Positions 989 through 38,144 of a DNA stretch of 64,000 bases are shown here, in pieces. The stretch covers positions 62,001 to 126,000 of the IMG/VR virus record IMGVR_UViG_3300037042_002125; one strand, given 5' to 3'. The translations under genes were made by a program, and so were the position numbers. The notes beneath the pieces are model-generated. The model was not told where the DNA came from, searched no databases, and saw nothing but the letters and a program-made list of their open reading frames with translations. How positions within the stretch are numbered: the first letter of the stretch is position 1; each line of letters starts with the position of its first letter.

Positions 989-2482
989 TTAGTCAAGTAA
1001 GTGGATAAAGCCTTTGAGTTGCTCTGCCATGAACGCTGCGGGCTTGGCTTTGCGATGCTCCAAAGTCTTCTTCTTTGTCATGACCTCTTTCATCTGCTGT
1101 TCAAGGGCTTTGCGCTCAAGTGCCCTAAGTTGGCGTACCTTCAGGTCATAAATGAAGGCGGCCTCAGCTTGCGTGATCTTCAACTTTGCAGCAAGCCACT
1201 TTTCCAACTCGTCTTGGCTAAGTGTTTTGTCCAGCGACTCAATGATGATCTTGCGATTATCCACAGCAAGCATGAGTAGCTCTAGCTTTCGTATTTGCTT
1301 TACCGTCTCTCCAATCCAATACGAGCATGCCTTACGCTCCAAGTCTGTGCGCCACTCGACCCAGTTGGTTAAAGCCTCCGTTACAGATTGCGGTTTCATG
1401 CGGGCTTGGCCTTGCCCCTCTTTGTCCAAGTAACGCTCTGTGAAGTTCAGGATGTAGTTCTCCCGCGAACTAACTTCCTCGTCAATGCGAGTCAATAGCT
1501 TGGCGTAATCTTTTGTTGTGAGGTTGCGCCTAACGTTGACCTTGACCGTGCCGTACTTCTCGCCCTTGGTAGAATTGTCCAAAGCGGACGCTACACCGTT
1601 CATCGCGCCTAAGTTTCCTAGCAACTTCTCTACGTTGACTTTGCTATTGCCGAAGCGAGAGATAGTTATGGTCTTGGCCTTATCATCAAACACAGGGTTG
1701 CCGTACAGAGTAGCTCTGCCTGTCATACCCTTGAACATAGCAAGCCGCTCAAGCTTCTCTTCTTTAGGCGCTTCCTCGAGGCGCTCGACACCACCAAAGA
1801 GTGTGCATAGCTTCAATCCCTTATAGAGCAACTTAGCGGTGATCTCTTCACCATCATAGATTGCCTTGAGAGTCTTCAACACGCTCTTGAATGTGAAGCT
1901 TGGGATGTTGGTCTGCGCGCCAGGTGCAATACCAAAGCGTCCGTTTAGGAAAACAATGGGTAGCAAAGCTGGCAACACTACAGGCTCTTTGCCGCTGCTA
2001 TCGAAGTTAGGCCCCATCTCCACAACAGGCAGATAGAATTTGTTAAACAGCACCTCGTCCGAAAACTTGCTCAATCGGGCCTCTGTGTACCTGTGCGCCG
2101 CGTAGCTCTTGTCTGAGAACGAACCCCAATTGCCTTCACCTTCAAGCAAGCCGCATTGGACATTGTTGATTGTCTGACCCACGTTGGTCATGCCAACCAT
2201 TGCGCCGTAGCAAGAGCTGTCACCGTGAGGATGGAAGCGGCCCAGCGTATCACCAACGATACGAGCTGACTTCACAAACTTGCTGGTGCTATGGACACCT
2301 AACTCATGGGCTGACCACAACACACGGCGGTTAACTGGGTTCATGCCGTCCCGGTAGTCTGGGATAGCACGATCCTCAAGCACAGAGACTCCGTAGTTCT
2401 TGTACTTGCGTATTGCAAATTTATCAAGTGGTACACTGATGTGTTTCTCAGCAACCACCGTCAAACTAATTTTCTTGCTCAT
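989..2482 (-). CDS. gyrA: type IIA DNA topoisomerase subunit A (GyrA/ParC-like, no C-terminal pinwheel domain)
   Basis: RAIPDYRDG, KSARIVG, FHPHGD, EGEGNWGS and catalytic AAHRYTEARL motifs. Confidence 0.95.
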   Translation of the reverse strand: MSKKISLTVVAEKHISVPLDKFAIRKYKNYGVSVLEDRAIPDYRDGMNPVNRRVLWSAHELGVHSTSKFVKSARIVGDTLGRFHPHGDSSCYGAMVGMTNVGQTINNVQCGLLEGEGNWGSFSDKSYAAHRYTEARLSKFSDEVLFNKFYLPVVEMGPNFDSSGKEPVVLPALLPIVFLNGRFGIAPGAQTNIPSFTFKSVLKTLKAIYDGEEITAKLLYKGLKLCTLFGGVERLEEAPKEEKLERLAMFKGMTGRATLYGNPVFDDKAKTITISRFGNSKVNVEKLLGNLGAMNGVASALDNSTKGEKYGTVKVNVRRNLTTKDYAKLLTRIDEEVSSRENYILNFTERYLDKEGQGQARMKPQSVTEALTNWVEWRTDLERKACSYWIGETVKQIRKLELLMLAVDNRKIIIESLDKTLSQDELEKWLAAKLKITQAEAAFIYDLKVRQLRALERKALEQQMKEVMTKKKTLEHRKAKPAAFMAEQLKGFIHLLD

Positions 2483-2489
2483 GTTTTTC

Positions 2490-2831
2490 TCATGTAGGTT
2501 CACCAGCTGCGGTGATAAATTCTTCGAAGGCTAAACTTGGCCTAACTTGATGGTAATGGATATAATGCTTGTAACCATAAGGCCACACCCACACATTGCC
2601 GCCAATATCAAGCTTGTACTCAATTGAGCCATTGGATTTGTCGCACATCCTGCACCAGGAGAAACCTTTGTACTGAACAGATTCAACTCCTGACTCTACT
2701 CTTGATTCTACTCTTGAGAGCAAACGTAAAAAGAGATCCCTGTTCCTCCATGAGGTACCTACAGGAGTAGGGAGATGTGTCTCGTGGTCAGAGGCCCAAA
2801 AGCCCTCTCTGTTTATTAACAACTTAGCCAT
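2490..2831 (-). CDS. hypothetical protein (YKGFSWCRMC...WPYGYKHY)
   Basis: ORF coupled to neighbours; CxxC plus His motif; start moved to ATG with AGGA RBS. Confidence 0.7.
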   Translation of the reverse strand: MAKLLINREGFWASDHETHLPTPVGTSWRNRDLFLRLLSRVESRVESGVESVQYKGFSWCRMCDKSNGSIEYKLDIGGNVWVWPYGYKHYIHYHQVRPSLAFEEFITAAGEPT

Positions 2832-3123: not shown

Positions 3124-3343
3124 GCCACCTTTGGTCTCTGTAGTCTCGCCGCTCCGTGTGGTACATAAAGTCCTCGTACAAAATAACAAGAACATAGCAC
3201 ACCAAGGAGGTCAAACCTAAGCCGAGGCCTAGTGCAAATAGCATGTCCATAGACTTTGCCATAAGCATTGACATGATAACAGAGGCTATACCTCCTGCGA
3301 AAAGAGATAGGCTGATCCCCTTTATGTTTGATGTATCCATCAT
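3077..3343 (-). CDS. small membrane protein (two TM segments)
   Basis: two hydrophobic stretches; start coupled to topoisomerase B stop. Confidence 0.6.
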   Translation of the reverse strand: MMDTSNIKGISLSLFAGGIASVIMSMLMAKSMDMLFALGLGLGLTSLVCYVLVILYEDFMYHTERRDYRDQRWHDQEQAEKAKANCNE

Positions 3344-5196
3344 GTTACTCCGAATAACACCTTGCGGAACGCTGGGCTCTTGCCCAACAGAAGCTGGAAG
3401 TCTTGCGAGCCTTTCTTATCTGGCGGCATAACTTGATACAGCTTGCGAATTTTAGGATCAAGGGCAATGTCGAGATCACTCTCACTCAACTCACCCCAAC
3501 CTTTGATGTAAGTCACCTCACATTTGGTGGTGCCTGTTTTCTCAAACACCTGCTCTTTGGTCATGCCGAAGTATATGACACCTTTGTACCTCGATTTGTA
3601 CAACGGCGCTTTCACCACAAAGACCTTACCATCCTTGAACAGCGATGGTAAATACTTCCACAGCACACCTAAAAGCAGGACATTGATGTGGTCACCGTCA
3701 ACATCAGGGTCGGCCATGTTAATGATCTTGCCGTAGGGCACGTTCAAGTTAGGTCGCTTGCCACCTAAGTCAATGCCAAGTGCAGCCAGCAGACCAACAA
3801 CCTCAGCGTTGCCATTGATCTTTTCCTTTTTGGCCTCCATAACGTTCAGGGGCTTGCCTCGCAGAGGATAAATCGCCTGCGTGTACTTGTTACGTGCCCG
3901 CTTTGCACCACCACCAGCAGAGTCACCCTCAACAAGGAACAGCTCGCGTTGCTCGACTGGCGCGTTACCTTGGATAGGTGCCAACTTGGTGGCCAGCTTT
4001 TTCTTTGCAGCGTTAACGTTCTTGACAAGCTTCTTGTCCTTGAGGAAGTCAGCGGTCTTGCTGCGTAGTAAGGCCGCTCGCGTTACAACGTCACGCGCCA
4101 TTCCTTTGTGTGCTACCCAAAAATCATGGAAGGCTTTCAGGAACTGTTTATACCCCACCTCGTACACACGGTCATCTATCAGCTTGTCCTTCGGTTGGTT
4201 GTTGAACTGCGGTGCAGCTATCTTGTAGTTGACAAGGCCGATCAAGCCATCCTTCAAGTCAGACGGTGTGTACTTGTTCTTACCTTGGTATGGTACAAGG
4301 GACTTAACCATTGCATCAACAAGGGCCTTCACATGCTCACCACCCTCCTTGTTATGCAGGCCGTTAGTGTAGGCGTCGATCAGGTTGTCACCTTCGCAGT
4401 CAGTGAACGCAATAGCAATGTCCGCCTCCTTGCTGGAGAACACAAACGATTTGCCCATCTGAGTAGCCTTGAGCTCATCAATCTTGTTCACAATATACTC
4501 GGCAGGACCCTTCGTAATAAACGTCTTGGTCTTGCCTTTACTATTTGTGATCTTGACCTCCAAGCCTTTAACCAAGTAGGACGTTAGCTCTGCCCAGCTA
4601 AGTGGGTCCTTAGGGTTCAGCTTTGCTCCTTTGTGGAACAAACTTAGGTCCGGAGAGAAGCACACCACAGTGCCCTTCTTTGCCTTAATCCCATGTGGCA
4701 GCTTAGGCGCTTTGCCCTTGTATACCTGCTTGCTAAGTTTGGCATCCCTGTACTCGATGCACCACCACGCACCATCACGGAACGTCCAGACCTTGAAGAA
4801 TTTGGACATTGCATTGGTGGCCTTGATACCAACACCGTGCGTGCCTCGGCTTATAGTGTCGCCACTAAAGTTGGAGCCACCGTGCGTCAAGCCTGTCACC
4901 ACGTAGAACGTTGACATCTTCTCTTTGCGGCCTTGCTCGTCCAGGAACTCCTTCTTGCCAACTGGGATGCCTTCACCACCATCAACAACCCAGTAAACGT
5001 TAGGCTCTGCATCGAAGATCAAATGCACGAGCTTATTACGGCCTGCAAGCGCCTGATCTACCGCGTTGTCCGCTGGCTCTCGGAACATAGTCCACAAGCC
5101 GTTGCCGTCGGTTGGCCCCAAATAAGGGGTGGGCTTTTTTCTAATTCCCATGAGCCCCGCATGTCTCTCAATATGGGATTCGTCGTACTTTGTCAT
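3340..5196 (-). CDS. gyrB: type IIA DNA topoisomerase subunit B (GyrB/ParE-like)
   Basis: GHKL motifs EPADNAVD, THGGSNF, GTHGVG; Toprim motifs LVEGDSA, PLRGK, DPDVDG, KGWGE. Confidence 0.95.
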   Translation of the reverse strand: MTKYDESHIERHAGLMGIRKKPTPYLGPTDGNGLWTMFREPADNAVDQALAGRNKLVHLIFDAEPNVYWVVDGGEGIPVGKKEFLDEQGRKEKMSTFYVVTGLTHGGSNFSGDTISRGTHGVGIKATNAMSKFFKVWTFRDGAWWCIEYRDAKLSKQVYKGKAPKLPHGIKAKKGTVVCFSPDLSLFHKGAKLNPKDPLSWAELTSYLVKGLEVKITNSKGKTKTFITKGPAEYIVNKIDELKATQMGKSFVFSSKEADIAIAFTDCEGDNLIDAYTNGLHNKEGGEHVKALVDAMVKSLVPYQGKNKYTPSDLKDGLIGLVNYKIAAPQFNNQPKDKLIDDRVYEVGYKQFLKAFHDFWVAHKGMARDVVTRAALLRSKTADFLKDKKLVKNVNAAKKKLATKLAPIQGNAPVEQRELFLVEGDSAGGGAKRARNKYTQAIYPLRGKPLNVMEAKKEKINGNAEVVGLLAALGIDLGGKRPNLNVPYGKIINMADPDVDGDHINVLLLGVLWKYLPSLFKDGKVFVVKAPLYKSRYKGVIYFGMTKEQVFEKTGTTKCEVTYIKGWGELSESDLDIALDPKIRKLYQVMPPDKKGSQDFQLLLGKSPAFRKVLFGVT

Positions 5197-11764: not shown

Positions 11765-11842
11765 TGGTGGGACGTGTAGGACTTGAACCTACGACCAATG
11801 GATTATGAGTCCACTGCTACTGACCAACTGAGCTAACGTCCC
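11765..11842 (-). tRNA. tRNA with CAT anticodon, probably tRNA-Ile2 (lysidine type) rather than Met
   Basis: GGGACGT/ACGTCCC acceptor, GTGGA-CTCATAA-TCCAT anticodon arm, GGTTCAAGTCC T-arm, encoded CCA. Confidence 0.93.
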
Positions 11843-12321: not shown

Positions 12322-12720
<399 letters not shown>

Positions 12721-12756
12721 CACCACAACCATATGAAGGTCAAGTTAGACTTACCC

Positions 12757-13986: not shown

Positions 13987-14568
13987 TTAGGCCTTTGGCA
14001 AGGTCACACCGACCTGACCTTGGTACTTACCACCGCGGCTGGCGTAAGTCGTTTCGCACTGCTCGTCGCTTTGGAAGAACAACATTTGGGCGCAGCCTTC
14101 GTTGGCGTAAATCTTTGCTGGCAGCGGCGTTGTGTTCGAGAACTCAAGCGTAACGTATCCTTCCCACTCTGGCTCAAGAGGAGTGACGTTGACAACAATG
14201 CCGCACCTGGCGTAAGTGCTCTTGCCCAAACAAATAACAAGTACGTCACTAGGGATAATGAAATACTCCAAGGTACGGGCCAGCGCAAAGCTGTTAGGTG
14301 GGATGATACAATATCCCTTGCCGCTAACGTCAACAAAGCAACCTTCGTCAAAATCCTTTGGATCAACAATGGTGCTGTTGATGTTGGTGAAGACCTTAAA
14401 CTCGTCTGCACACCGTACGTCGTAGCCATAAGATGATGTCCCATAGCTAATAACCTTTTTGCCTTTGTTGGCGGATCGCACTTGCCCTGGCTCAAAAGGT
14501 GCAATCATAGGTCTGAATTTTAAGCCTAGGCACTGCTCTCGAATCCATTTGTCGCTTTTGATACTCAT
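13987..14568 (-). CDS. dcd: dCTP deaminase
   Basis: [32 protein letters not shown] motifs; proteobacterial type. Confidence 0.97.
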
Positions 14569-16648: not shown

Positions 16649-17032
16649 TTATCTCCGCATTTTGGAAATATCCTTTATCTCCTCGTCAGAGAAGACAGGG
16701 ATGCCGTTGCTCTTGTGGAGTACAGACACGCCGAGCATTTTTGTGCCTGTGTACTTTGGGCTCGCCTTAAACGTGCCTCTGTATTCTTGGTCGCCAAGAG
16801 CCTCGCTTGCATTCAAGCTCTTGAGGTGCTTTGTGTTCGTCCTGCCTGGTGGAGTTTCTAACTTAGGCATCATCCGCAAGCTCATGCCCTTAGGCCTAGG
16901 CGTGCGAGCAAACTTAGGCAAAGCGTCTAGGCGAGCCTGCATCTGCACAAAGGCCTGCTCTGCATCCAGGTCGGACTTAGTGGCTTTGCGAGGTTTACGC
17001 CGTGGCGCCTTGTCAATAATTCGGAGGAGCAT
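16649..17032 (-). CDS. phage hypothetical protein (YTGT...HKSNxxPVF...ISKMRR)
   Basis: C-terminal motif I recall from large myoviruses. Confidence 0.7.
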   Translation of the reverse strand: MLLRIIDKAPRRKPRKATKSDLDAEQAFVQMQARLDALPKFARTPRPKGMSLRMMPKLETPPGRTNTKHLKSLNASEALGDQEYRGTFKASPKYTGTKMLGVSVLHKSNGIPVFSDEEIKDISKMRR

Positions 17033-17474
17033 AGTCTTTGAGAAACAACTTAGCTGAGTAATGGAGATCGAATTCTTCACCTATTACAAAGACATTGGTG
17101 GCCCCAGGCGTTGTGTCATACCAGAAGTAGGCATCCACTTCATCTGTTAGCATAAAGGCGCTAGGTGCCCAAATCTTCCAAAGGTCAACTGGGTAGTACC
17201 AGAGGATCTTTGCTCCTTTGCGGGTCGCCTGCTTGATCAAGTTGAAACGATGTGAGCTCCAGCGCACTTTGGTTTCCTCGTACAGCTCACGAGATACTGC
17301 TTCGAGCCACCCTTCGCCTGAATCTACGTGGCCACCGAACAGACCCCAGGTGCCAGGATTGTTGCACTGTGCTGAGCGTTTGCCTAACAAAATCTTTTGA
17401 GGATCTGTTGGGTGTGTAATAACTACCCATACGCGAGTATCTTTATCAGATTCTTTTTCATTTGGCTGCCCCAT
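17013..17474 (-). CDS. Nudix hydrolase
   Basis: Nudix box GGHVDSGEGWLEAVSRELYEET. Confidence 0.9.
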   Translation of the reverse strand: MGQPNEKESDKDTRVWVVITHPTDPQKILLGKRSAQCNNPGTWGLFGGHVDSGEGWLEAVSRELYEETKVRWSSHRFNLIKQATRKGAKILWYYPVDLWKIWAPSAFMLTDEVDAYFWYDTTPGATNVFVIGEEFDLHYSAKLFLKDYAPPNY

Positions 17475-17478
17475 GTTA

Positions 17479-17841
17479 TTAACCTTTTGTGTTAAGTTGG
17501 ATTGCTTCAAACCGCAGAGAAGAGAGGCAAGGGCAGAGCTCCTGCTCTTCCCTGCAATAGTCGTTGGCTATGTTAGCCTTCGTCTCGGCGTAGTCTCTTG
17601 TAACATCCTGCAGGATGCCTACCGCAACATGCGGTATGACAATAATTCTAGCCACCGCTTTGGCTTCCCTGCGTTTGTAATGAAATACTTCACGCAGGCA
17701 GCGTACCAGCAAGTTATCACAAAAGTGTCCATGGTGACCAACAACCACTAGCCACTTAAGTGGTTCCTTGCTGCTATCCTTAATAGATATGTCAGGTTCC
17801 CTTGGGCGAACCCAAGGGGGATCCTTAACTATTTCAGACAT
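17479..17841 (-). CDS. ClpS-like protease adaptor (divergent)
   Basis: LREVF...EA...TRDYAETKANIANDYCREE aligns by eye to the ClpS core; NDDxT pocket replaced by HHGHF. Confidence 0.65.
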   Translation of the reverse strand: MSEIVKDPPWVRPREPDISIKDSSKEPLKWLVVVGHHGHFCDNLLVRCLREVFHYKRREAKAVARIIVIPHVAVGILQDVTRDYAETKANIANDYCREEQELCPCLSSLRFEAIQLNTKG

Positions 17842-17847
17842 AGGAAC

Positions 17848-18117
17848 TTACTCCTTGTATAGGCCCAAAGCCTTCTCAATAAACAGAACGTCCTCAGGCC
17901 TGCTCTCGACTTTTAAGCCTATGGACTTATCGAACACTTGGACTTCAGTTTTCATGTTAATGAAAAAGAAGCCTGCGCCTATTATGGTGTCAGGTGTAAA
18001 CACTTTGGCAATGTCAGCGTGGCCAACGTGTTCAGGAAACACGACAGCACTAATAGTGCCAAGACCTGTTAGGGGGTTTGCAATATCCCCAACGATGTAC
18101 TTGCCTTTTTGCCACAT
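17848..18117 (-). CDS. hypothetical protein
   Basis: 89-aa ORF with AGGA RBS. Confidence 0.65.
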   Translation of the reverse strand: MWQKGKYIVGDIANPLTGLGTISAVVFPEHVGHADIAKVFTPDTIIGAGFFFINMKTEVQVFDKSIGLKVESRPEDVLFIEKALGLYKE

Positions 18118-18366: not shown

Positions 18367-19014
18367 TTACAGGGCAGCGTTCTTGAGACCTGTCAACGGA
18401 CGCACCTTCACGCGGACAAAAGCCGCCTTCGCCTTCTGCTTGACCATCTCGCCGGTAAAGCGGTTCATCACCATCTTGCCACCCTTGCGAGCAGGAATCT
18501 TCTTGGTGACGATACGCAACATACCAGGCAGCACAAACTGACCAACGCCGCGCGGCGCAATGGAGCCAAGCATAAGCTCGTTAAGGCCAGACAACATCTC
18601 ACGCACCGTCGCCTTGTCAGTGTCGGCGCGATCTGCAAGATGCTCGATCAGGCCGGCCTTGGTGAATTTGGTCTTCACTGGTTTGATTGCTTCGACAACC
18701 TTCTTGGCGCGCGGCTTGCGTACAGCGGCCACCTTCGCTTTCGTAGGCTTGCCGGTTTTGGCAACAGTCTTGGCGGCTCGGGCCCTTACTATGCTGGTTG
18801 CTTCGGCCTTCTTGGCCGGAACTTTCTTTGCCGGTGCCTTCTTCGCTGCAGGCTTTGCCGCCGCCGCCGCCGCCGCCGCCGCCGCTTTGGCTTTGGCCAC
18901 AGGCCTGGCCTTCTTGCCGTTCACCTCACCGAAGATGTCCTTCATCACAGATGCCGGAACAGACTTCGAGATACGCGACGTGGTTTTGGATTTGGATTTT
19001 ACGATCTTAGGCAT
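18367..19014 (-). CDS. HU/IHF-family DNA-binding protein with H1-like K/A/P-rich extension
   Basis: C-terminal TKAGLIEHLA...LPG...PARKG...NRFTGE...KVRP HU fold. Confidence 0.88.
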   Translation of the reverse strand: MPKIVKSKSKTTSRISKSVPASVMKDIFGEVNGKKARPVAKAKAAAAAAAAAAKPAAKKAPAKKVPAKKAEATSIVRARAAKTVAKTGKPTKAKVAAVRKPRAKKVVEAIKPVKTKFTKAGLIEHLADRADTDKATVREMLSGLNELMLGSIAPRGVGQFVLPGMLRIVTKKIPARKGGKMVMNRFTGEMVKQKAKAAFVRVKVRPLTGLKNAAL

Positions 19015-28018: not shown

Positions 28019-28918
28019 TTAAACAGAAGTTAGGTTCGTGCTAATTCTTTCGAATAGAGTCAACTTCAATCTCAAATCATCTATCGAATCCGTCACAGCT
28101 TCTTGGAAAGCTTGCTCGGCTTTAGCTTCACTTACTTGTTTAGCTTTGAGCATCTGGGATAAGAACGACTTGTCAAACTCTGCAGCCTCCTGCTTGACCT
28201 TAAGCAATGCCTCTTTGGCCTTTTTCTTCTTTCCCCTAAGTCTCTCAAGTATGTTCCTCTTAGGGTGCCCGGACTTGTACTCCTCAGCCCTTTTGATCAT
28301 GTCAATAAGAACGTTGATATCACCTATCTCATACGCAAGCTTGCCTGCGTAAAATATCTCAGCTAAATAATCGTCGTTGCCATTCTTGTCAGGGTGGCAC
28401 AGAGACGACAGCTTCTTGTACAGCTTCTTAATTTTGGTTGCTGACCTCTTCTCTCTTAGCTGGGCTTTCTCGCGTTCTTTGTCATGTTCTCGTGTATTGT
28501 TTATGTGTAGCTTGATCTCCTCGTCTAAGTCACGCTCACCAGTAGGGTCCTTTATTGGGTCCATCTTTAACTGGCTGTCGTGCTTACGCCTAGCTTCCAT
28601 CAGTTGGTTTTGTAGGTCAACCAACACAGATACTTGGTCCTTGTACTTTAGTTCAAGTCCACGTATAAGAGTCATTGCCTGTGTCTGCTTTGTGTTTAGA
28701 TCATGATTTAGCTTCTGTACATCACGGGCCACCATTTCATAGCTTACAGTTTCCAAATCAATCTCGTAATCAAACACGTAGATGACGGAGGGCAAGTATG
28801 ATCCTGTGTAAGGTGATTTAGGCTTAAGTTGGTTGGTCCAGCCTTTGTGTATGAAAGACTCGTTGAGTAAGATGTTTGTGGAGAAAGGACTTGTAGATGT
28901 GCTGTAGAAAATTCCCAT
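28019..28918 (-). CDS. J-domain (DnaJ-like) coiled-coil protein
   Basis: IKKLYKKLSSLCHPDKN...AY helix-HPD-helix motif. Confidence 0.8.
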   Translation of the reverse strand: MGIFYSTSTSPFSTNILLNESFIHKGWTNQLKPKSPYTGSYLPSVIYVFDYEIDLETVSYEMVARDVQKLNHDLNTKQTQAMTLIRGLELKYKDQVSVLVDLQNQLMEARRKHDSQLKMDPIKDPTGERDLDEEIKLHINNTREHDKEREKAQLREKRSATKIKKLYKKLSSLCHPDKNGNDDYLAEIFYAGKLAYEIGDINVLIDMIKRAEEYKSGHPKRNILERLRGKKKKAKEALLKVKQEAAEFDKSFLSQMLKAKQVSEAKAEQAFQEAVTDSIDDLRLKLTLFERISTNLTSV

Positions 28919-35560: not shown

Positions 35561-36580
35561 ATGATAGTCAAAGGCACTTTTAGTAGGTTGAACAGGTTCA
35601 ACGTCCAGTGGCAGATAGGAAACTTCTGCAACTACAAATGTTCATACTGCGAGCCTAAATTCAGAGATGGGACCAACCCATTCCTTCCAATCGAACTAGC
35701 CAAGACAGTGATACGTAATGTTGTATCCAAGGTACCAGAACGAAACGCAATCTTCAATTACCAAGGCGGTGAGCCAACTGCTTACAGGGATTTTGAAGAG
35801 CTACTTAGCTTCACGTTCGATATAGGTGCTGGTTCCCTTATGGTGTCCAACGCATCTCGTTCTGTGGCGTACCTACGGCGCATTGCTCCTTATCTGAGCT
35901 ACTCTTACTTGACCTTCCATTCGGACATGGTGGATATAGACAGGTTCTTAGAACGCCTCCACGTATTCCACCCATCCCGAGTCCTTGTGTACTTGCCAAT
36001 GAATCCCAAATTATGGGACAAGTGTGTTGATGCCCATAGGCGCATTACAGATGCAAACTACCGTGTGGTGGCGAAAGTTATCTTCGATGACTATGGTGGA
36101 GGTAACTTGAACAATAGCATAGCCTACACCAAAGAGCAAAAAGCATTTATCGATGATGGGAATAAGAACTTGCTTGTACCCAAACCTGCTAATGACAAAC
36201 AAGGGCCAATGCCTTTCCAACTTAATCCAAAAGGCGAAATGGACTTTAGCGTTGATGTCAGGGCTATCCAAATCTTCGACCAAGGCCAAGTCAAGCTAAC
36301 CACGTCCCAGAACCTGGTCGTGACAAAACAGAACAACTACGTTGGCTTCGAGTGCTTCGGTGGGCTGGAAGAACTGTGCATCACTTCTAAAGGCAAGGTC
36401 TACACCACCGTGTGTATGCAGGACAAAGCAATAGCAGACATTTTCAAGGACCCTAACTTTGACCTGCCAACCAAACCCATGATCTGCAGACGCACCAACT
36501 GCTGGTGTGAAGCAGACTTGCTGCTAACAAAAATTTCCCCAGACGAGCCACAATTCTCTACACCTACACTTGCCAAATAA
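35561..36580 (+). CDS. radical SAM protein with SPASM/twitch-like C-terminus
   Basis: CNYKCSYC, GGEPT, C-terminal ECFGG...C...C.CWC. Confidence 0.92.
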   Translation: MIVKGTFSRLNRFNVQWQIGNFCNYKCSYCEPKFRDGTNPFLPIELAKTVIRNVVSKVPERNAIFNYQGGEPTAYRDFEELLSFTFDIGAGSLMVSNASRSVAYLRRIAPYLSYSYLTFHSDMVDIDRFLERLHVFHPSRVLVYLPMNPKLWDKCVDAHRRITDANYRVVAKVIFDDYGGGNLNNSIAYTKEQKAFIDDGNKNLLVPKPANDKQGPMPFQLNPKGEMDFSVDVRAIQIFDQGQVKLTTSQNLVVTKQNNYVGFECFGGLEELCITSKGKVYTTVCMQDKAIADIFKDPNFDLPTKPMICRRTNCWCEADLLLTKISPDEPQFSTPTLAK

Positions 36581-36584
36581 TCAT

Positions 36585-38144
36585 ATGCAACAATTCGATG
36601 TAAACGTTTTGATATTCACAGACTGCTCTGGGACCATATTTTCTAGAGCAGCAGGAGCCTACCGAATAGCAACAGAGCTCCGCAACAATGGGTACACTGT
36701 TCAAGTGGTCGACCACTTTTTGCTTGCAGGGTTACAAACCACTTTAGACCTTGTAGACAAATTTGTTGGGCCCTCGACTTTGTTTGTTGGGTTCTCAACC
36801 ACGTTTATGAACCCTGGGGAAATGCACCTCAAAGAGGCGGTTAAAGACACTAGCACAGTGTTCAAAGTAAACGGAGTTAAGACGAATCAGATCACAGCAC
36901 CAGCTATGATCTCCGTGAACCTACCTCTGACACGAAGCGACCTGCAGGTAATTCGCGATCGCATCTTGTCCAAATCTCCTAACGCCAAGTTGGTAATGGG
37001 TGGGGCAAAGACAGAGTACCGGGCAAAAGATCAAGTCCAGATAGATACATACCTATCTGGGTATGCGGATACCTCAGTAGTTGAGTACGTTAAGTACCTT
37101 GATGGCAAGAACCCGTTCTTTCAATTCAAGACAACACCCGATGGTCGAATGTTGATCGACCACGATGTAATGGCTGCCAATTTTGATTTCAAACACTCAA
37201 CCATCGAGTACCAAGAATCAGATTTCATATCGCCCGGCGAAGTGCTGCCTATAGAGATATCTCGGGGTTGCATTTTCAAATGCAAATTTTGCGCGTTTGT
37301 CTTGACCGGCAAAAAGAGAACAGACCACCTTAAGGATAGGGAGGTTCTGTACTCTGAGCTAATGCGTAATTACGAAAAGTTTGGTACCACCAAGTACCTA
37401 TTCTCTGATGACACTTACAACGACAGCGTAGCCAAGCTTGAGTACTTTGCAGAGACCTTCCGCAAGCTACCATTCAAGATTGAGTACGCGGCTTACTTGC
37501 GGCATGACCTAATAGCTACGTTCCCAGAAATGGCTGACCTGCTAATGGAAAGTGGAATCAAGTCTGCTATCTTCGGCCTTGAGACATTGAACCACACTGC
37601 AGGAAAGATTGTTGGCAAAGGCATGGACCCCAAAAAGATAAAGGAGATGCTACTGTGGTTGCGTAACGAAAAAGGTTGGGCCAAGAATATCCTTATGACC
37701 TCTGGTTTCATGGTCGGGTTGCCAACAGAGTCCCAAGAGACTGTTATGTCCTGGGCAGAAGAACTCTGGGACCCAACCTACCCCCTAGATTCATTCATCT
37801 TCTCTCCACTGACAATTTACCCTGACACAAACCGAATAGGCAAATCAGAGTTTGAGAAGGAGTACGAGAAGTACGGGTACTGGTTCGACCTTGCTGTATC
37901 ATCTGGTTGGATCAACGAGCACTGGGACTACGACAAGGCAAAGGTCTTCGCAAACTGGCTTACCACTGAGACAAATCGGAAAGGGAGAAGCCGAATGTTA
38001 GGCTTCCCTGCCATGATGGCTCATAACTACGGAGCAACGTGGGAGCAGATACATACTATGAGAGCCAGAAAATTTCTCCCCAACATATTTGCAAGGACAC
38101 AGGTGATGGCAAATAATTACCACTCAAAACTCCTTGCCTTATGA
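36585..38144 (+). CDS. B12-binding-domain radical SAM protein
   Basis: EISRGCIFKCKFC, SDDTYN, FGLET, FMVGLP; N-terminal VGFSTTF/MGG B12-like domain. Confidence 0.9.
   Translation: MQQFDVNVLIFTDCSGTIFSRAAGAYRIATELRNNGYTVQVVDHFLLAGLQTTLDLVDKFVGPSTLFVGFSTTFMNPGEMHLKEAVKDTSTVFKVNGVKTNQITAPAMISVNLPLTRSDLQVIRDRILSKSPNAKLVMGGAKTEYRAKDQVQIDTYLSGYADTSVVEYVKYLDGKNPFFQFKTTPDGRMLIDHDVMAANFDFKHSTIEYQESDFISPGEVLPIEISRGCIFKCKFCAFVLTGKKRTDHLKDREVLYSELMRNYEKFGTTKYLFSDDTYNDSVAKLEYFAETFRKLPFKIEYAAYLRHDLIATFPEMADLLMESGIKSAIFGLETLNHTAGKIVGKGMDPKKIKEMLLWLRNEKGWAKNILMTSGFMVGLPTESQETVMSWAEELWDPTYPLDSFIFSPLTIYPDTNRIGKSEFEKEYEKYGYWFDLAVSSGWINEHWDYDKAKVFANWLTTETNRKGRSRMLGFPAMMAHNYGATWEQIHTMRARKFLPNIFARTQVMANNYHSKLLAL

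What the first reader, a model, noticed from the sequence alone, without database searches (positions are those of the whole stretch)
17479..17841. ClpS-like adaptor with a rewired substrate pocket
Seen: the ClpA-docking helix motif (DYAETK) is retained, but the NDDxT/H N-degron residues are replaced by GHHGHFC, with extra Cys (CPC). Known: ClpS delivers N-end-rule substrates and inhibits ClpAP degradation of ssrA-tagged proteins. Inference: a ClpAP inhibitor or re-targeting adaptor. With the altered tmRNA tag and the J-domain protein it suggests a proteostasis-hijacking toolkit.
Basis: partly seen in the sequence, partly recalled or inferred. Interest (0 to 1): 0.6.

Follow-up and report, generated by a model that had tools for sequence, protein, structure and literature searches.

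The report
Phage ClpS-like protein, N-degron pocket replaced
A freshwater jumbo phage carries a small protein that descends from the bacterial protease adaptor ClpS. It keeps the face that docks on ClpA, but the residues that read protein N-termini are replaced by a conserved cysteine/histidine cluster, so it probably blocks or redirects the host ClpAP protease rather than acting as a normal ClpS.

Summary
Window 17479-17841 (-) is a real 120-aa gene with a Shine-Dalgarno site, in a 222-kb uncultured freshwater jumbo phage.

**Homology to ClpS**
- Curated models miss it: Pfam ClpS scores 16 bits against a cut-off of 23.
- A profile of its nine-member family hits only ClpS chains in the PDB (best E 1e-6).
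- The AlphaFold model (pLDDT 82.6) superposes on E. coli and Caulobacter ClpS at Z 12-13, rmsd 1.7 A over about 82 residues. Ribosomal L7/L12 reaches only Z 7-9.

**Kept**
- A disordered N-terminal extension with an invariant junction proline.
- The helix-3 ClpA-contact residues: E79, E82, K84 of E. coli ClpS correspond to D83, E86, K88 here.

**Lost and gained**
- None of the N-degron contacts N34, D36, H66 is retained.
- In their place are H36, C41, C103 and C105 and an EQxxCxCxSS loop insertion beside the pocket.

**Reading.** It is most likely a ClpS-derived protein that docks on host ClpA and cannot read N-degrons, acting as a ClpAP blocker or a re-aimed adaptor. Binding and metal content are untested.

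**Novelty.** Phage ClpS genes are already known from genome surveys, so this is a new variant of a known kind. A NUDIX gene directly downstream, and a phage tmRNA with an unusual conserved tag nearby, recur in relatives.

The parts
17479..17841 (-). ClpS-like gene, 120 aa plus stop
   Evidence: ORF. Family profile against PDB returns only ClpS chains, best E 1e-6. hhalign against E. coli ClpS gives probability 93%, E 2.8e-7. AlphaFold model has pLDDT 82.6. Foldseek top 30 hits are all ClpS. VIA-align gives Z 12-13.
17851..17856 (-). Shine-Dalgarno AAGGAG, 9 nt before the ATG and just before the upstream gene's stop codon (17848-17850)
   Evidence: Read from the sequence.
17758..17841 (-). Residues 1-28: N-terminal extension predicted to be disordered, ending in the invariant junction proline P27
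   Evidence: pLDDT 56-68 over residues 1-30 and no secondary structure. P27 is invariant and aligns with E. coli P25. The role of the extension and junction prolines is described in PMC9663308.
17719..17739 (-). Residues 35-41, GHHGHFC: the strand 1 - helix 1 loop that in ClpS carries the N-degron contacts N34, D35, D36, T38
   Evidence: Alignment register. In the family H36 is 8/9, G38 is 8/9 and C41 is 9/9.
17578..17595 (-). Residues 83-88, DYAETK: start of helix 3, equivalent to E. coli ClpS E79-K84, which contacts the ClpA N-domain
   Evidence: D83 9/9, A85 9/9, E86 8/9, T87 9/9, K88 4/9. Contact roles come from PMC12493166.
17518..17547 (-). Residues 99-108, EQELCPCLSS: end of helix 3 and an enlarged helix 3 - strand 3 loop with the invariant CxC
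   Evidence: E99, Q100, C103, C105, S107 are invariant. The model has helix 82-100 and strand 110-115. About 82 residues align within model span 28-116, so about 7 residues are insertions. The helix 3 - strand 3 loop bounds the ClpS pocket (bioRxiv 10.1101/2024.06.12.598358).
17013..17474 (-). NUDIX hydrolase gene. Its ATG lies 4 nt after the ClpS-like stop, and the pairing is conserved in relatives.
   Evidence: Pfam NUDIX E 1.9e-11. Start read from the sequence. The same adjacency is found in L002-L005, L008-L011 and L014.

Best explanation
The gene encodes a highly diverged ClpS homologue confined to one lineage of uncultured freshwater jumbo myophages. Three things are shown. [quoted passage not shown] The helix-3 residues that contact the ClpA N-domain in E. 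coli ClpS are the best conserved part of the family. The polar residues that hold an N-degron are all replaced. The rest is inferred. During infection the protein docks on the N-domain of the host's ClpA and feeds its extension into the ClpA pore as ClpS does. Because it cannot bind Leu/Phe/Tyr/Trp N-termini, it acts as a competitive, non-delivering ClpS. It would displace host ClpS, which shuts the N-degron pathway. Like ClpS, it would also restrain ClpAP action on ssrA-tagged and other directly recognised substrates. The invariant C41, C103 and C105 and the near-invariant H36 sit on the two loops that border the old pocket. They most likely hold a metal ion, probably zinc, that fills or clamps that site. 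This could stabilise the core against unfolding by ClpA.
For: Homology: all 10 PDB hits of the family profile are ClpS, best E 1e-6. hhalign against E. coli ClpS gives probability 93%. All five best NCBIfam hits are ClpS models. In the ESM Atlas, 29 of 30 feature neighbours are ClpS clusters, and the top one is a viral ClpS cluster. [quoted passage not shown] Foldseek TM 0.76-0.88 by target. Z 12-13 at rmsd 1.7 A over the whole ClpS core, against Z 7-9 for L7/L12. Docking face: E79 corresponds to D83 (9/9), E82 to E86 (8/9 E, 1 D), and K84 to K88 (K in 4, Q in 1, L in 4). These E. coli residues bond with ClpA E28/T81, R86 and E23, and a Leptospira ClpS1 with Val at the K84 position still binds ClpA at 0.44 uM (PMC12493166). 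Extension: low pLDDT and invariant P27. Lost pocket: N34 becomes H/Y, D36 becomes G/S, H66 is variable, D35, M40 and M62 are variable, and T38 becomes hydrophobic. Five ClpS proteins of isolated phages keep N34 (4/5) and T38 (5/5). ClpS inhibits degradation of ssrA-tagged substrates, and ClpS isoforms inhibit ClpA ATPase and autodegradation only when the N-domain is present (PMC9663308; PMC12493166). The phage has no Clp_N, AAA_2 or ClpP gene, so any Clp partner must be the host's.
Against: No binding evidence exists. Half of the family has Leu or Gln at the K84-equivalent position. The host is unknown. It is guessed to be a betaproteobacterium only from sheath similarity to Ralstonia, Burkholderia and Achromobacter phages, so the presence of ClpA/ClpS in it is assumed. 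The strong conservation of the new motif (E99, Q100, C103, C105, S107) exceeds what a plain loss-of-function decoy needs. This suggests a positive function at that site. Metal binding rests on a residue pattern and loop topology only, and one member has Tyr in place of H36. The tight, conserved coupling to a NUDIX gene is not explained by this model.
Confidence: 0.5

Rival explanations
1. Re-aimed adaptor. The protein still docks on host ClpA, but the new Cys/His/EQ...SS site is a cargo-binding site. It would deliver one specific host or phage protein to ClpAP for destruction, or hold it away from ClpAP.
For: The new motif is as invariant as the docking helix, which suggests selection for a function at that site. 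The hydrophobic pocket-lining positions are kept as hydrophobic residues: V34, L45, I67, and L109 by the structural register. A cavity may therefore persist. Iyer et al. proposed that phage ClpS brings targets to host ClpAP (PMC7824862). Metal ions bridging a ClpS pocket histidine and the ligand were seen in M. smegmatis ClpS crystals.
Against: No candidate cargo is known and no coordinates were available to check for a cavity. A Cys3His cluster is more typical of a structural metal site than of a peptide-binding site.
Confidence: 0.22
2. Clp-independent use of the ClpS fold. The protein would work with the NUDIX hydrolase encoded directly downstream, or with another partner, for example as a regulatory or metal-sensing subunit. 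Conservation of helix 3 would then be structural only.
For: The ClpS-like then NUDIX gene order, with spacing of -17 to +12 nt, is kept in 7 of 9 family branches, down to about 31% identity, while the upstream neighbour changes. The phage itself has no Clp genes.
Against: The conserved helix-3 residues are exactly the surface residues that contact ClpA in solved complexes, not buried core positions. Branch P0007 has no NUDIX gene nearby. Synteny within one phage lineage is weak evidence of interaction.
Confidence: 0.15
3. Ordinary N-recognin ClpS that delivers Leu/Phe/Tyr/Trp N-degron substrates.
For: It has the ClpS fold, the N-terminal extension and the docking residues.
Against: None of N34, D36 and H66, the residues that hold the N-terminal amine, is retained in the family. 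The gatekeeper position M40 is variable (roles). Pfam and NCBIfam scores are far below the cut-offs.
Confidence: 0.03

Closest known systems
Bacterial ClpS (E. coli ClpS, PDB 1MBU/3O2B; Caulobacter ClpS 3DNJ; A. tumefaciens ClpS2 4YJM)
   Same: Same fold (Z 12-13, rmsd 1.7 A over the whole core). It has a disordered N-terminal extension with a junction proline. It has the helix-3 acidic pair and the AETK motif that contact the ClpA N-domain. The best sequence-profile match is ClpS2 of A. tumefaciens, which has RDIAETKAK opposite the family's RDxAETKA.
   Different: N34, D35, D36, T38, M40 and H66 are all replaced. Three invariant cysteines and a histidine are new. There is a two-residue insertion before strand 2 and an insertion of about 5-6 residues in the helix 3 - strand 3 loop. 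It is not next to clpA. It scores below the Pfam and NCBIfam thresholds.
ClpS genes of isolated jumbo phages (PA5oct, Atu_ph07 gp708, Phosso, GAP32, RaK2, Vibrio phage 2.275.O)
   Same: These are phage-borne ClpS-fold proteins, mostly in jumbo phages. Genome surveys have proposed that they exploit host ClpAP (PMC7824862, PMC6102473). They are the nearest viral structural neighbours.
   Different: Those proteins are found with E. coli ClpS by plain tblastn (27 phage records). They mostly keep N34, D35 and T38. This family is invisible to tblastn in the phage collection and has a different motif set. None of these proteins has been studied experimentally, as far as the searched literature shows.
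Phage-encoded inhibitors of host AAA+ proteases (T4 PinA and T7 Gp4.5 against Lon)
   Same: The proposed outcome is the same: a small early phage protein that disarms a host ATP-dependent protease. This comparison is from my own knowledge and was not tested here.
   Different: The protease targeted and the fold are different. Here the inhibitor would be a degenerate copy of the protease's own adaptor.
Ribosomal protein bL12 C-terminal domain
   Same: It shares the ClpS-like alpha/beta fold class.
   Different: The structural match is clearly weaker (Z 7-8.8; Foldseek E 1e-2). No sequence signal was found.

Membership tests
ClpS (PF02617, N-degron adaptor of ClpAP/ClpCP) | [quoted passage not shown] | tested here: met
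   The AlphaFold model has E30-35, H42-52, H57-66, E74-80, H82-100, E110-115. Foldseek's top 30 hits are all ClpS. VIA-align gives Z 12-13.
ClpS (PF02617, N-degron adaptor of ClpAP/ClpCP) | Score above curated family thresholds | tested here: not met
   Pfam gives 16 bits against a cut-off of 23. NCBIfam ClpS equivalogs give 14-20 bits against cut-offs of 112-159. Homology is nevertheless supported at profile level, E 1e-6 and hhalign probability 93%.
ClpS (PF02617, N-degron adaptor of ClpAP/ClpCP) | N-degron contact residues (E. coli N34, D36, H66, plus D35, T38 and gatekeeper M40) | tested here: not met
   They correspond to H36, G38, V68, H37, F40 and D42. Family-wide, none is retained. Roles come from PMC12493166.
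ClpS (PF02617, N-degron adaptor of ClpAP/ClpCP) | ClpA N-domain contact residues on helix 3 (E79, E82, K84) | tested here: met
   D83 is 9/9, E86 is 8/9 with one Asp, and K88 is K in 4, Q in 1 and L in 4 of 9. This is a sequence-level test only.
ClpS (PF02617, N-degron adaptor of ClpAP/ClpCP) | Disordered N-terminal extension with junction proline(s) | tested here: met
   Residues 1-28 have pLDDT 56-68 and no secondary structure. P27 is invariant and aligns with E. coli P25.
ClpS (PF02617, N-degron adaptor of ClpAP/ClpCP) | Physical binding to a ClpA/ClpC N-domain | not testable with these tools
   The single complex prediction returned no verdict. It needs a pull-down or ITC.
ClpS (PF02617, N-degron adaptor of ClpAP/ClpCP) | Genomic linkage to clpA | tested here: not met
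   The 222-kb phage record has no Clp_N, AAA_2 or ClpP match. The neighbours are a NUDIX gene and an 89-aa ORF.
Structural zinc site (Cys3His) | Four ligands close in space, and bound metal | not testable with these tools
   C41, C103 and C105 are 9/9 and H36 is 8/9. They lie on the strand 1 - helix 1 loop and the helix 3 - strand 3 loop, both of which bound the ClpS pocket. No model coordinates were available to measure distances.
Ribosomal bL12 C-terminal domain | Best structural and sequence match to bL12 | tested here: not met
   Z 7-8.8 against 12-13 for ClpS. No bL12 hit in Pfam or in the PDB sequence searches.

The most novel reading that the evidence does not exclude
The phage runs a private tagging and adaptor pair. 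Its own permuted tmRNA adds a lineage-specific tag ending F-R-(M/Q)-V-A. The rewired pocket of the ClpS-like protein has co-evolved to recognise, or to shield, proteins carrying that tag at host ClpA. Trans-translation products made during infection would then be handled differently from host ssrA-tagged proteins. The only support is co-occurrence within about 5 kb in three diverged members of the lineage (window, L002, L010) and the invariance of the new site.
Probability: 0.06. Interest if true: 0.85.

Novelty: new variant of a known kind. Interest (0 to 1): 0.48.

Why it matters
Phage ClpS genes have been listed in genome surveys, but none has been characterised. This family offers a clean natural separation of function. 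The docking face and the N-terminal extension are kept, and N-degron reading is lost. That is the design expected of a viral blocker or re-aimer of ClpAP. If confirmed, it would be the first phage-encoded modulator of ClpAP built from the protease's own adaptor. It would extend the short list of phage anti-protease proteins, which so far target Lon. It would also provide a small tool to switch ClpAP specificity. The conserved partnership with a NUDIX gene and a phage tmRNA with its own tag gives concrete hypotheses about how jumbo phages manage host protein turnover.

Tried and rejected
**Complex prediction.** I ran E. coli ClpA residues 1-143 with the ClpS-like core (residues 20-120, with alignment A2) and zinc riding along. 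The score was 0.19 against a mark of 0.32, and the tool's verdict was 'no answer'. It is not used as evidence either way.

**Searches for more relatives that found none.**
- megablast and tblastn against 50,697 phage records
- PHROGs
- IMG/VR pattern scans with the window protein, P0007 and P0005
- 185,579 species genomes
- the four closest isolated phages, phiRSL1, BcepSauron, Motura and BCSR5, searched with both the family profile and PF02617

**Other steps that led nowhere.**
- No RNA run holds the region, so expression could not be checked.
- Literature searches for the E79A/K84A mutants and for named residues found nothing useful in the open library.

**Corrected registers.**
- My first mental register of the pocket loop was off by one. 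The script corrected it.
- The sequence-based pairing of C103 with E. coli L99 is probably wrong. The structural alignment ends at model 116 = E. coli 106. That places L109 opposite L99 and makes the CxC segment an insertion.

**Rejected idea.** A chance ORF or the overlapping plus-strand ORF (17473-17751) cannot be the real gene, because the minus-strand protein is the one conserved in relatives.

Full report
**1. What is at the coordinates**

Window 17479-17841 on the minus strand is an ATG-started ORF of 120 codons plus stop. An AAGGAG site lies 9 nt upstream of the ATG, just before the stop codon of the preceding 89-codon ORF. The next gene, a NUDIX hydrolase, starts 4 nt after the ORF's stop.

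The window is bases 62001-126000 of a 222,078-bp IMG/VR virus record that CheckV rates 93% complete. Its tail sheath is 42-46% identical to those of the jumbo myophages Ralstonia phiRSL1, Burkholderia BcepSauron/BcepSaruman/BCSR5 and Achromobacter Motura. A betaproteobacterial host is therefore a reasonable guess, but no more than that. Near-identical DNA occurs in lake-water and sediment metagenomes from about a dozen studies. No RNA run holds it.

**2. Is it a real gene and a real family?**

The word-index search found three relatives. The exhaustive search of 1.84 billion cluster representatives found seven, at 31-98% identity. The family is therefore small.

Aligned, the nine distinct sequences share 15 invariant columns: M1, P27, V32, C41, F53, D83, A85, T87, A92, E99, Q100, C103, C105, S107 and F111. 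H36, G38, E86 and S108 are kept in 8 of 9.

Every member comes from metagenomic contigs with phage-like content and the same wider synteny. This includes type II topoisomerase subunits, DnaJ-like genes, dCTP deaminase, an acyl-carrier protein, tRNAs and tmRNA.

Contigs from four independent runs cover the gene. They carry 9 substitutions, 4 synonymous and 5 conservative (L31I, N43S, H54N, A64S, L106I). None is at an invariant position.

**3. Homology and fold**

- **Single-sequence evidence is marginal.** Pfam ClpS gives 16 bits against a gathering score of 23. NCBIfam ClpS equivalogs give 14-20 bits against cut-offs above 110. phmmer against the PDB gives E about 0.01 to E. coli ClpS.
- **With the family profile the signal becomes clear.** All ten PDB hits are ClpS. 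The best is A. tumefaciens ClpS2 (4YJM, E 1e-6), followed by E. coli and Caulobacter ClpS at about 1e-5. hhalign against E. coli ClpS gives 93% probability and E 2.8e-7 over 82 columns.
- **The AlphaFold model matches the ClpS topology.** It was built with nine rows and has mean pLDDT 82.6, above 89 over residues 31-100. The order is strand 30-35, helices 42-52 and 57-66, strand 74-80, helix 82-100, strand 110-115, behind a low-confidence N-terminus.
- **Structural searches agree.** Foldseek's top 30 PDB hits are all ClpS, with TM 0.76-0.88 by target. VIA-align gives Z 12-13 and rmsd 1.7 A over 81-83 residues, spanning the whole ClpS core (model 27/28-116 = E. coli 25/26-106). The bL12 C-terminal domain reaches Z 7-8.8.
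- **Viral and language-model neighbours are ClpS too.** The nearest viral models are annotated phage ClpS proteins, including those of Atu_ph07 and RaK2. In the ESM Atlas, 29 of 30 feature neighbours are ClpS clusters, and the first is a viral ClpS cluster.

**4. What is kept and what is changed**

All three aligners use the same register. A script tabulated it.

| E. coli ClpS | Role | Window protein | In the family |
|---|---|---|---|
| P25 | junction proline | P27 | 9/9 |
| E79 | H-bonds ClpA E28/T81 | D83 | 9/9 |
| E82 | salt bridge with ClpA R86 | E86 | 8 Glu, 1 Asp |
| K84 | salt bridge with ClpA E23 | K88 | K in 4, Q in 1, L in 4 |
| N34 | N-degron contact | H36 | H 8/9, Y once |
| D35 | pocket | H37 | variable |
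| D36 | N-degron contact | G38 | G 8/9, S once |
| T38 | pocket | F40 | F/L/Y/V |
| M40 | gatekeeper | D42 | variable |
| M62 | pocket | A64 | variable |
| H66 | N-degron contact | V68 | variable |

The ClpA contact roles and the peptide-contact roles (Caulobacter N47, D49, H79 = E. coli N34, D36, H66) come from PMC12493166. That paper also reports that Leptospira ClpS1, which has Val at the K84 position, still binds ClpA at 0.44 uM. The junction-proline role comes from PMC9663308.

New features:
- C41 is invariant and lies opposite E. coli P39.
- The EQxxCxCxSS segment (residues 99-108) is new and largely invariant.
- By the structural alignment this segment is an insertion of about 5-6 residues in the helix 3 - strand 3 loop, and L109 takes the place of pocket residue L99.
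- The sequence aligners instead pair C103 with L99.
- Either way the two cysteines sit in the loop that, with strand 1 and helices 1 and 2, bounds the ClpS pocket (bioRxiv 10.1101/2024.06.12.598358).

Five ClpS proteins of isolated phages (PA5oct, Atu_ph07, Phosso, GAP32 and Vibrio 2.275.O), fetched for comparison, keep N34 in 4 of 5 and T38 in 5 of 5. None has the cysteines.

**5. Mechanism**

Shown:
- ClpS ancestry and fold.
- A retained extension and docking residues.
- A destroyed N-degron site.
- A new conserved Cys/His-containing motif at the former pocket.
- No Clp_N, AAA_2 or ClpP gene in the phage.

Established for ClpS in the literature:
- It docks on the ClpA N-domain.
- Its extension enters the ClpA pore as a degron mimic.
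- It inhibits degradation of ssrA-tagged substrates (PMC9663308).
- ClpS isoforms inhibit ClpA ATPase and autodegradation only when the N-domain is present (PMC12493166).

Inference: the phage protein occupies host ClpA like ClpS but cannot hand over N-degron substrates. It would therefore act as a dominant-negative ClpS and ClpAP damper. The Cys3His cluster is most simply read as a zinc site that clamps the two pocket loops.

From my own knowledge, two plausible benefits are protecting phage proteins with destabilising N-termini, and preventing ClpAP-dependent turnover of antitoxins or other abortive-infection triggers. This would parallel the Lon inhibitors of T4 and T7. I put about 0.5 on this reading.

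Rival readings:
- About 0.2 on a re-aimed adaptor in which the new site binds a specific cargo. The strong conservation of E99, Q100, S107 and S108 around the cysteines favours some positive function there.
- About 0.15 on a Clp-independent role linked to the NUDIX gene.
- A few per cent on an ordinary N-recognin.

**6. Context: the 'toolkit'**

- A permuted tmRNA lies at 12330-12737 on the minus strand (Rfam RF04321, 85 bits). It encodes the tag ANDENFRMVA.
- Related contigs carry a permuted tmRNA with the same tag (L002) or with ANESSFRQVA (L010). The ClpS-like protein of L010 is only 37% identical to the window's. The F-R-x-V-A ending is therefore conserved in the lineage.
- The 299-aa ORF at 28019-28918 on the minus strand has a J-domain with an HPD motif. 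Branch P0007 has two DnaJ-type genes nearby.
- These co-occurrences are real, but they sit inside a broadly syntenic early or DNA-metabolism block: topoisomerase II subunits, dCTP deaminase, an HU-like protein and a helicase. Linkage alone therefore says little.
- The most consistent neighbour is the NUDIX gene directly downstream. It is present in 7 of 9 family branches with spacing of -17 to +12 nt. It is absent in the P0007 branch and unresolved in the P0009 branch.

**7. Comparison with the known, and novelty**

Phage-encoded ClpS has been noted before. Iyer et al. 2021 propose that it brings targets to host ClpAP (PMC7824862). The Atu_ph07 genome paper lists ClpS gp708 (PMC6102473). E. 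coli ClpS finds 27 phage records by tblastn. I found no experimental study of any phage ClpS in the open library.

This family differs in four ways. It lies below curated thresholds. It lacks every N-degron contact. It has a new invariant Cys/His motif and two insertions. It is restricted to one uncultured phage lineage. I rate it a new variant of a known kind, of moderate interest. The function remains a hypothesis that simple biochemistry could settle.

Noticed in passing
window 12330-12737 (-); L002 6116-6516; L010 13624-13963: The phage encodes a permuted (two-piece) tmRNA with tag ANDENFRMVA. Related phage contigs carry the same tag or ANESSFRQVA, so the F-R-x-V-A ending is conserved over considerable divergence. 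The front half, ANDENF, resembles the E. coli-type tag ANDENY. From my own knowledge, artificial tags ending LVA are still degraded quickly, so the altered ending need not make the tag inert.
   Followed up: partly
window 17013-17474 (-): A NUDIX hydrolase gene starts 4 nt after the ClpS-like stop. This tight pairing is conserved in 7 of 9 branches of the family, while the upstream neighbour varies. No explanation was found.
   Followed up: partly
window 28019-28918 (-): A 299-aa protein has a central J-domain with an HPD motif (DnaJ 27.5-30.4 bits). It has no DnaJ_C domain and long charged flanks. A related contig (L012) carries two full DnaJ + DnaJ_C genes.
   Followed up: partly
window 18367-19014 (-): A 215-aa protein has an HU/IHF-like C-terminal domain (Bac_DNA_binding, 22 bits, just under the cut-off of 22.4). 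An Ala/Lys-rich, histone-H1-like N-terminal half precedes it, including a run of nine alanines.
   Followed up: no
window 989-2503 (-) and 3340-5196 (-): These are phage type II topoisomerase subunits (a topo IV/gyrase A-like and a gyrase B-like protein). The A subunit is closest (38% identity) to Rhizobium jumbo phages, whereas the sheath is closest to Ralstonia, Burkholderia and Achromobacter jumbo phages. The modules therefore have different nearest relatives.
   Followed up: no
L002 926-1432 (protein P0003): The 168-aa gene call for this relative is probably extended at its N-terminus. Met49 aligns with Met1 of all other family members, and the following 26 residues are almost identical to the window protein.
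   Followed up: partly
window 11765-11842 (-), 13987-14568 (-), 36570-38144 (+): A tRNA-Met, a dCTP deaminase-like gene (110 bits) and a 524-aa radical SAM protein lie in the same window. Related contigs also carry an acyl-carrier-protein gene between the NUDIX and dCTP deaminase genes.
   Followed up: no
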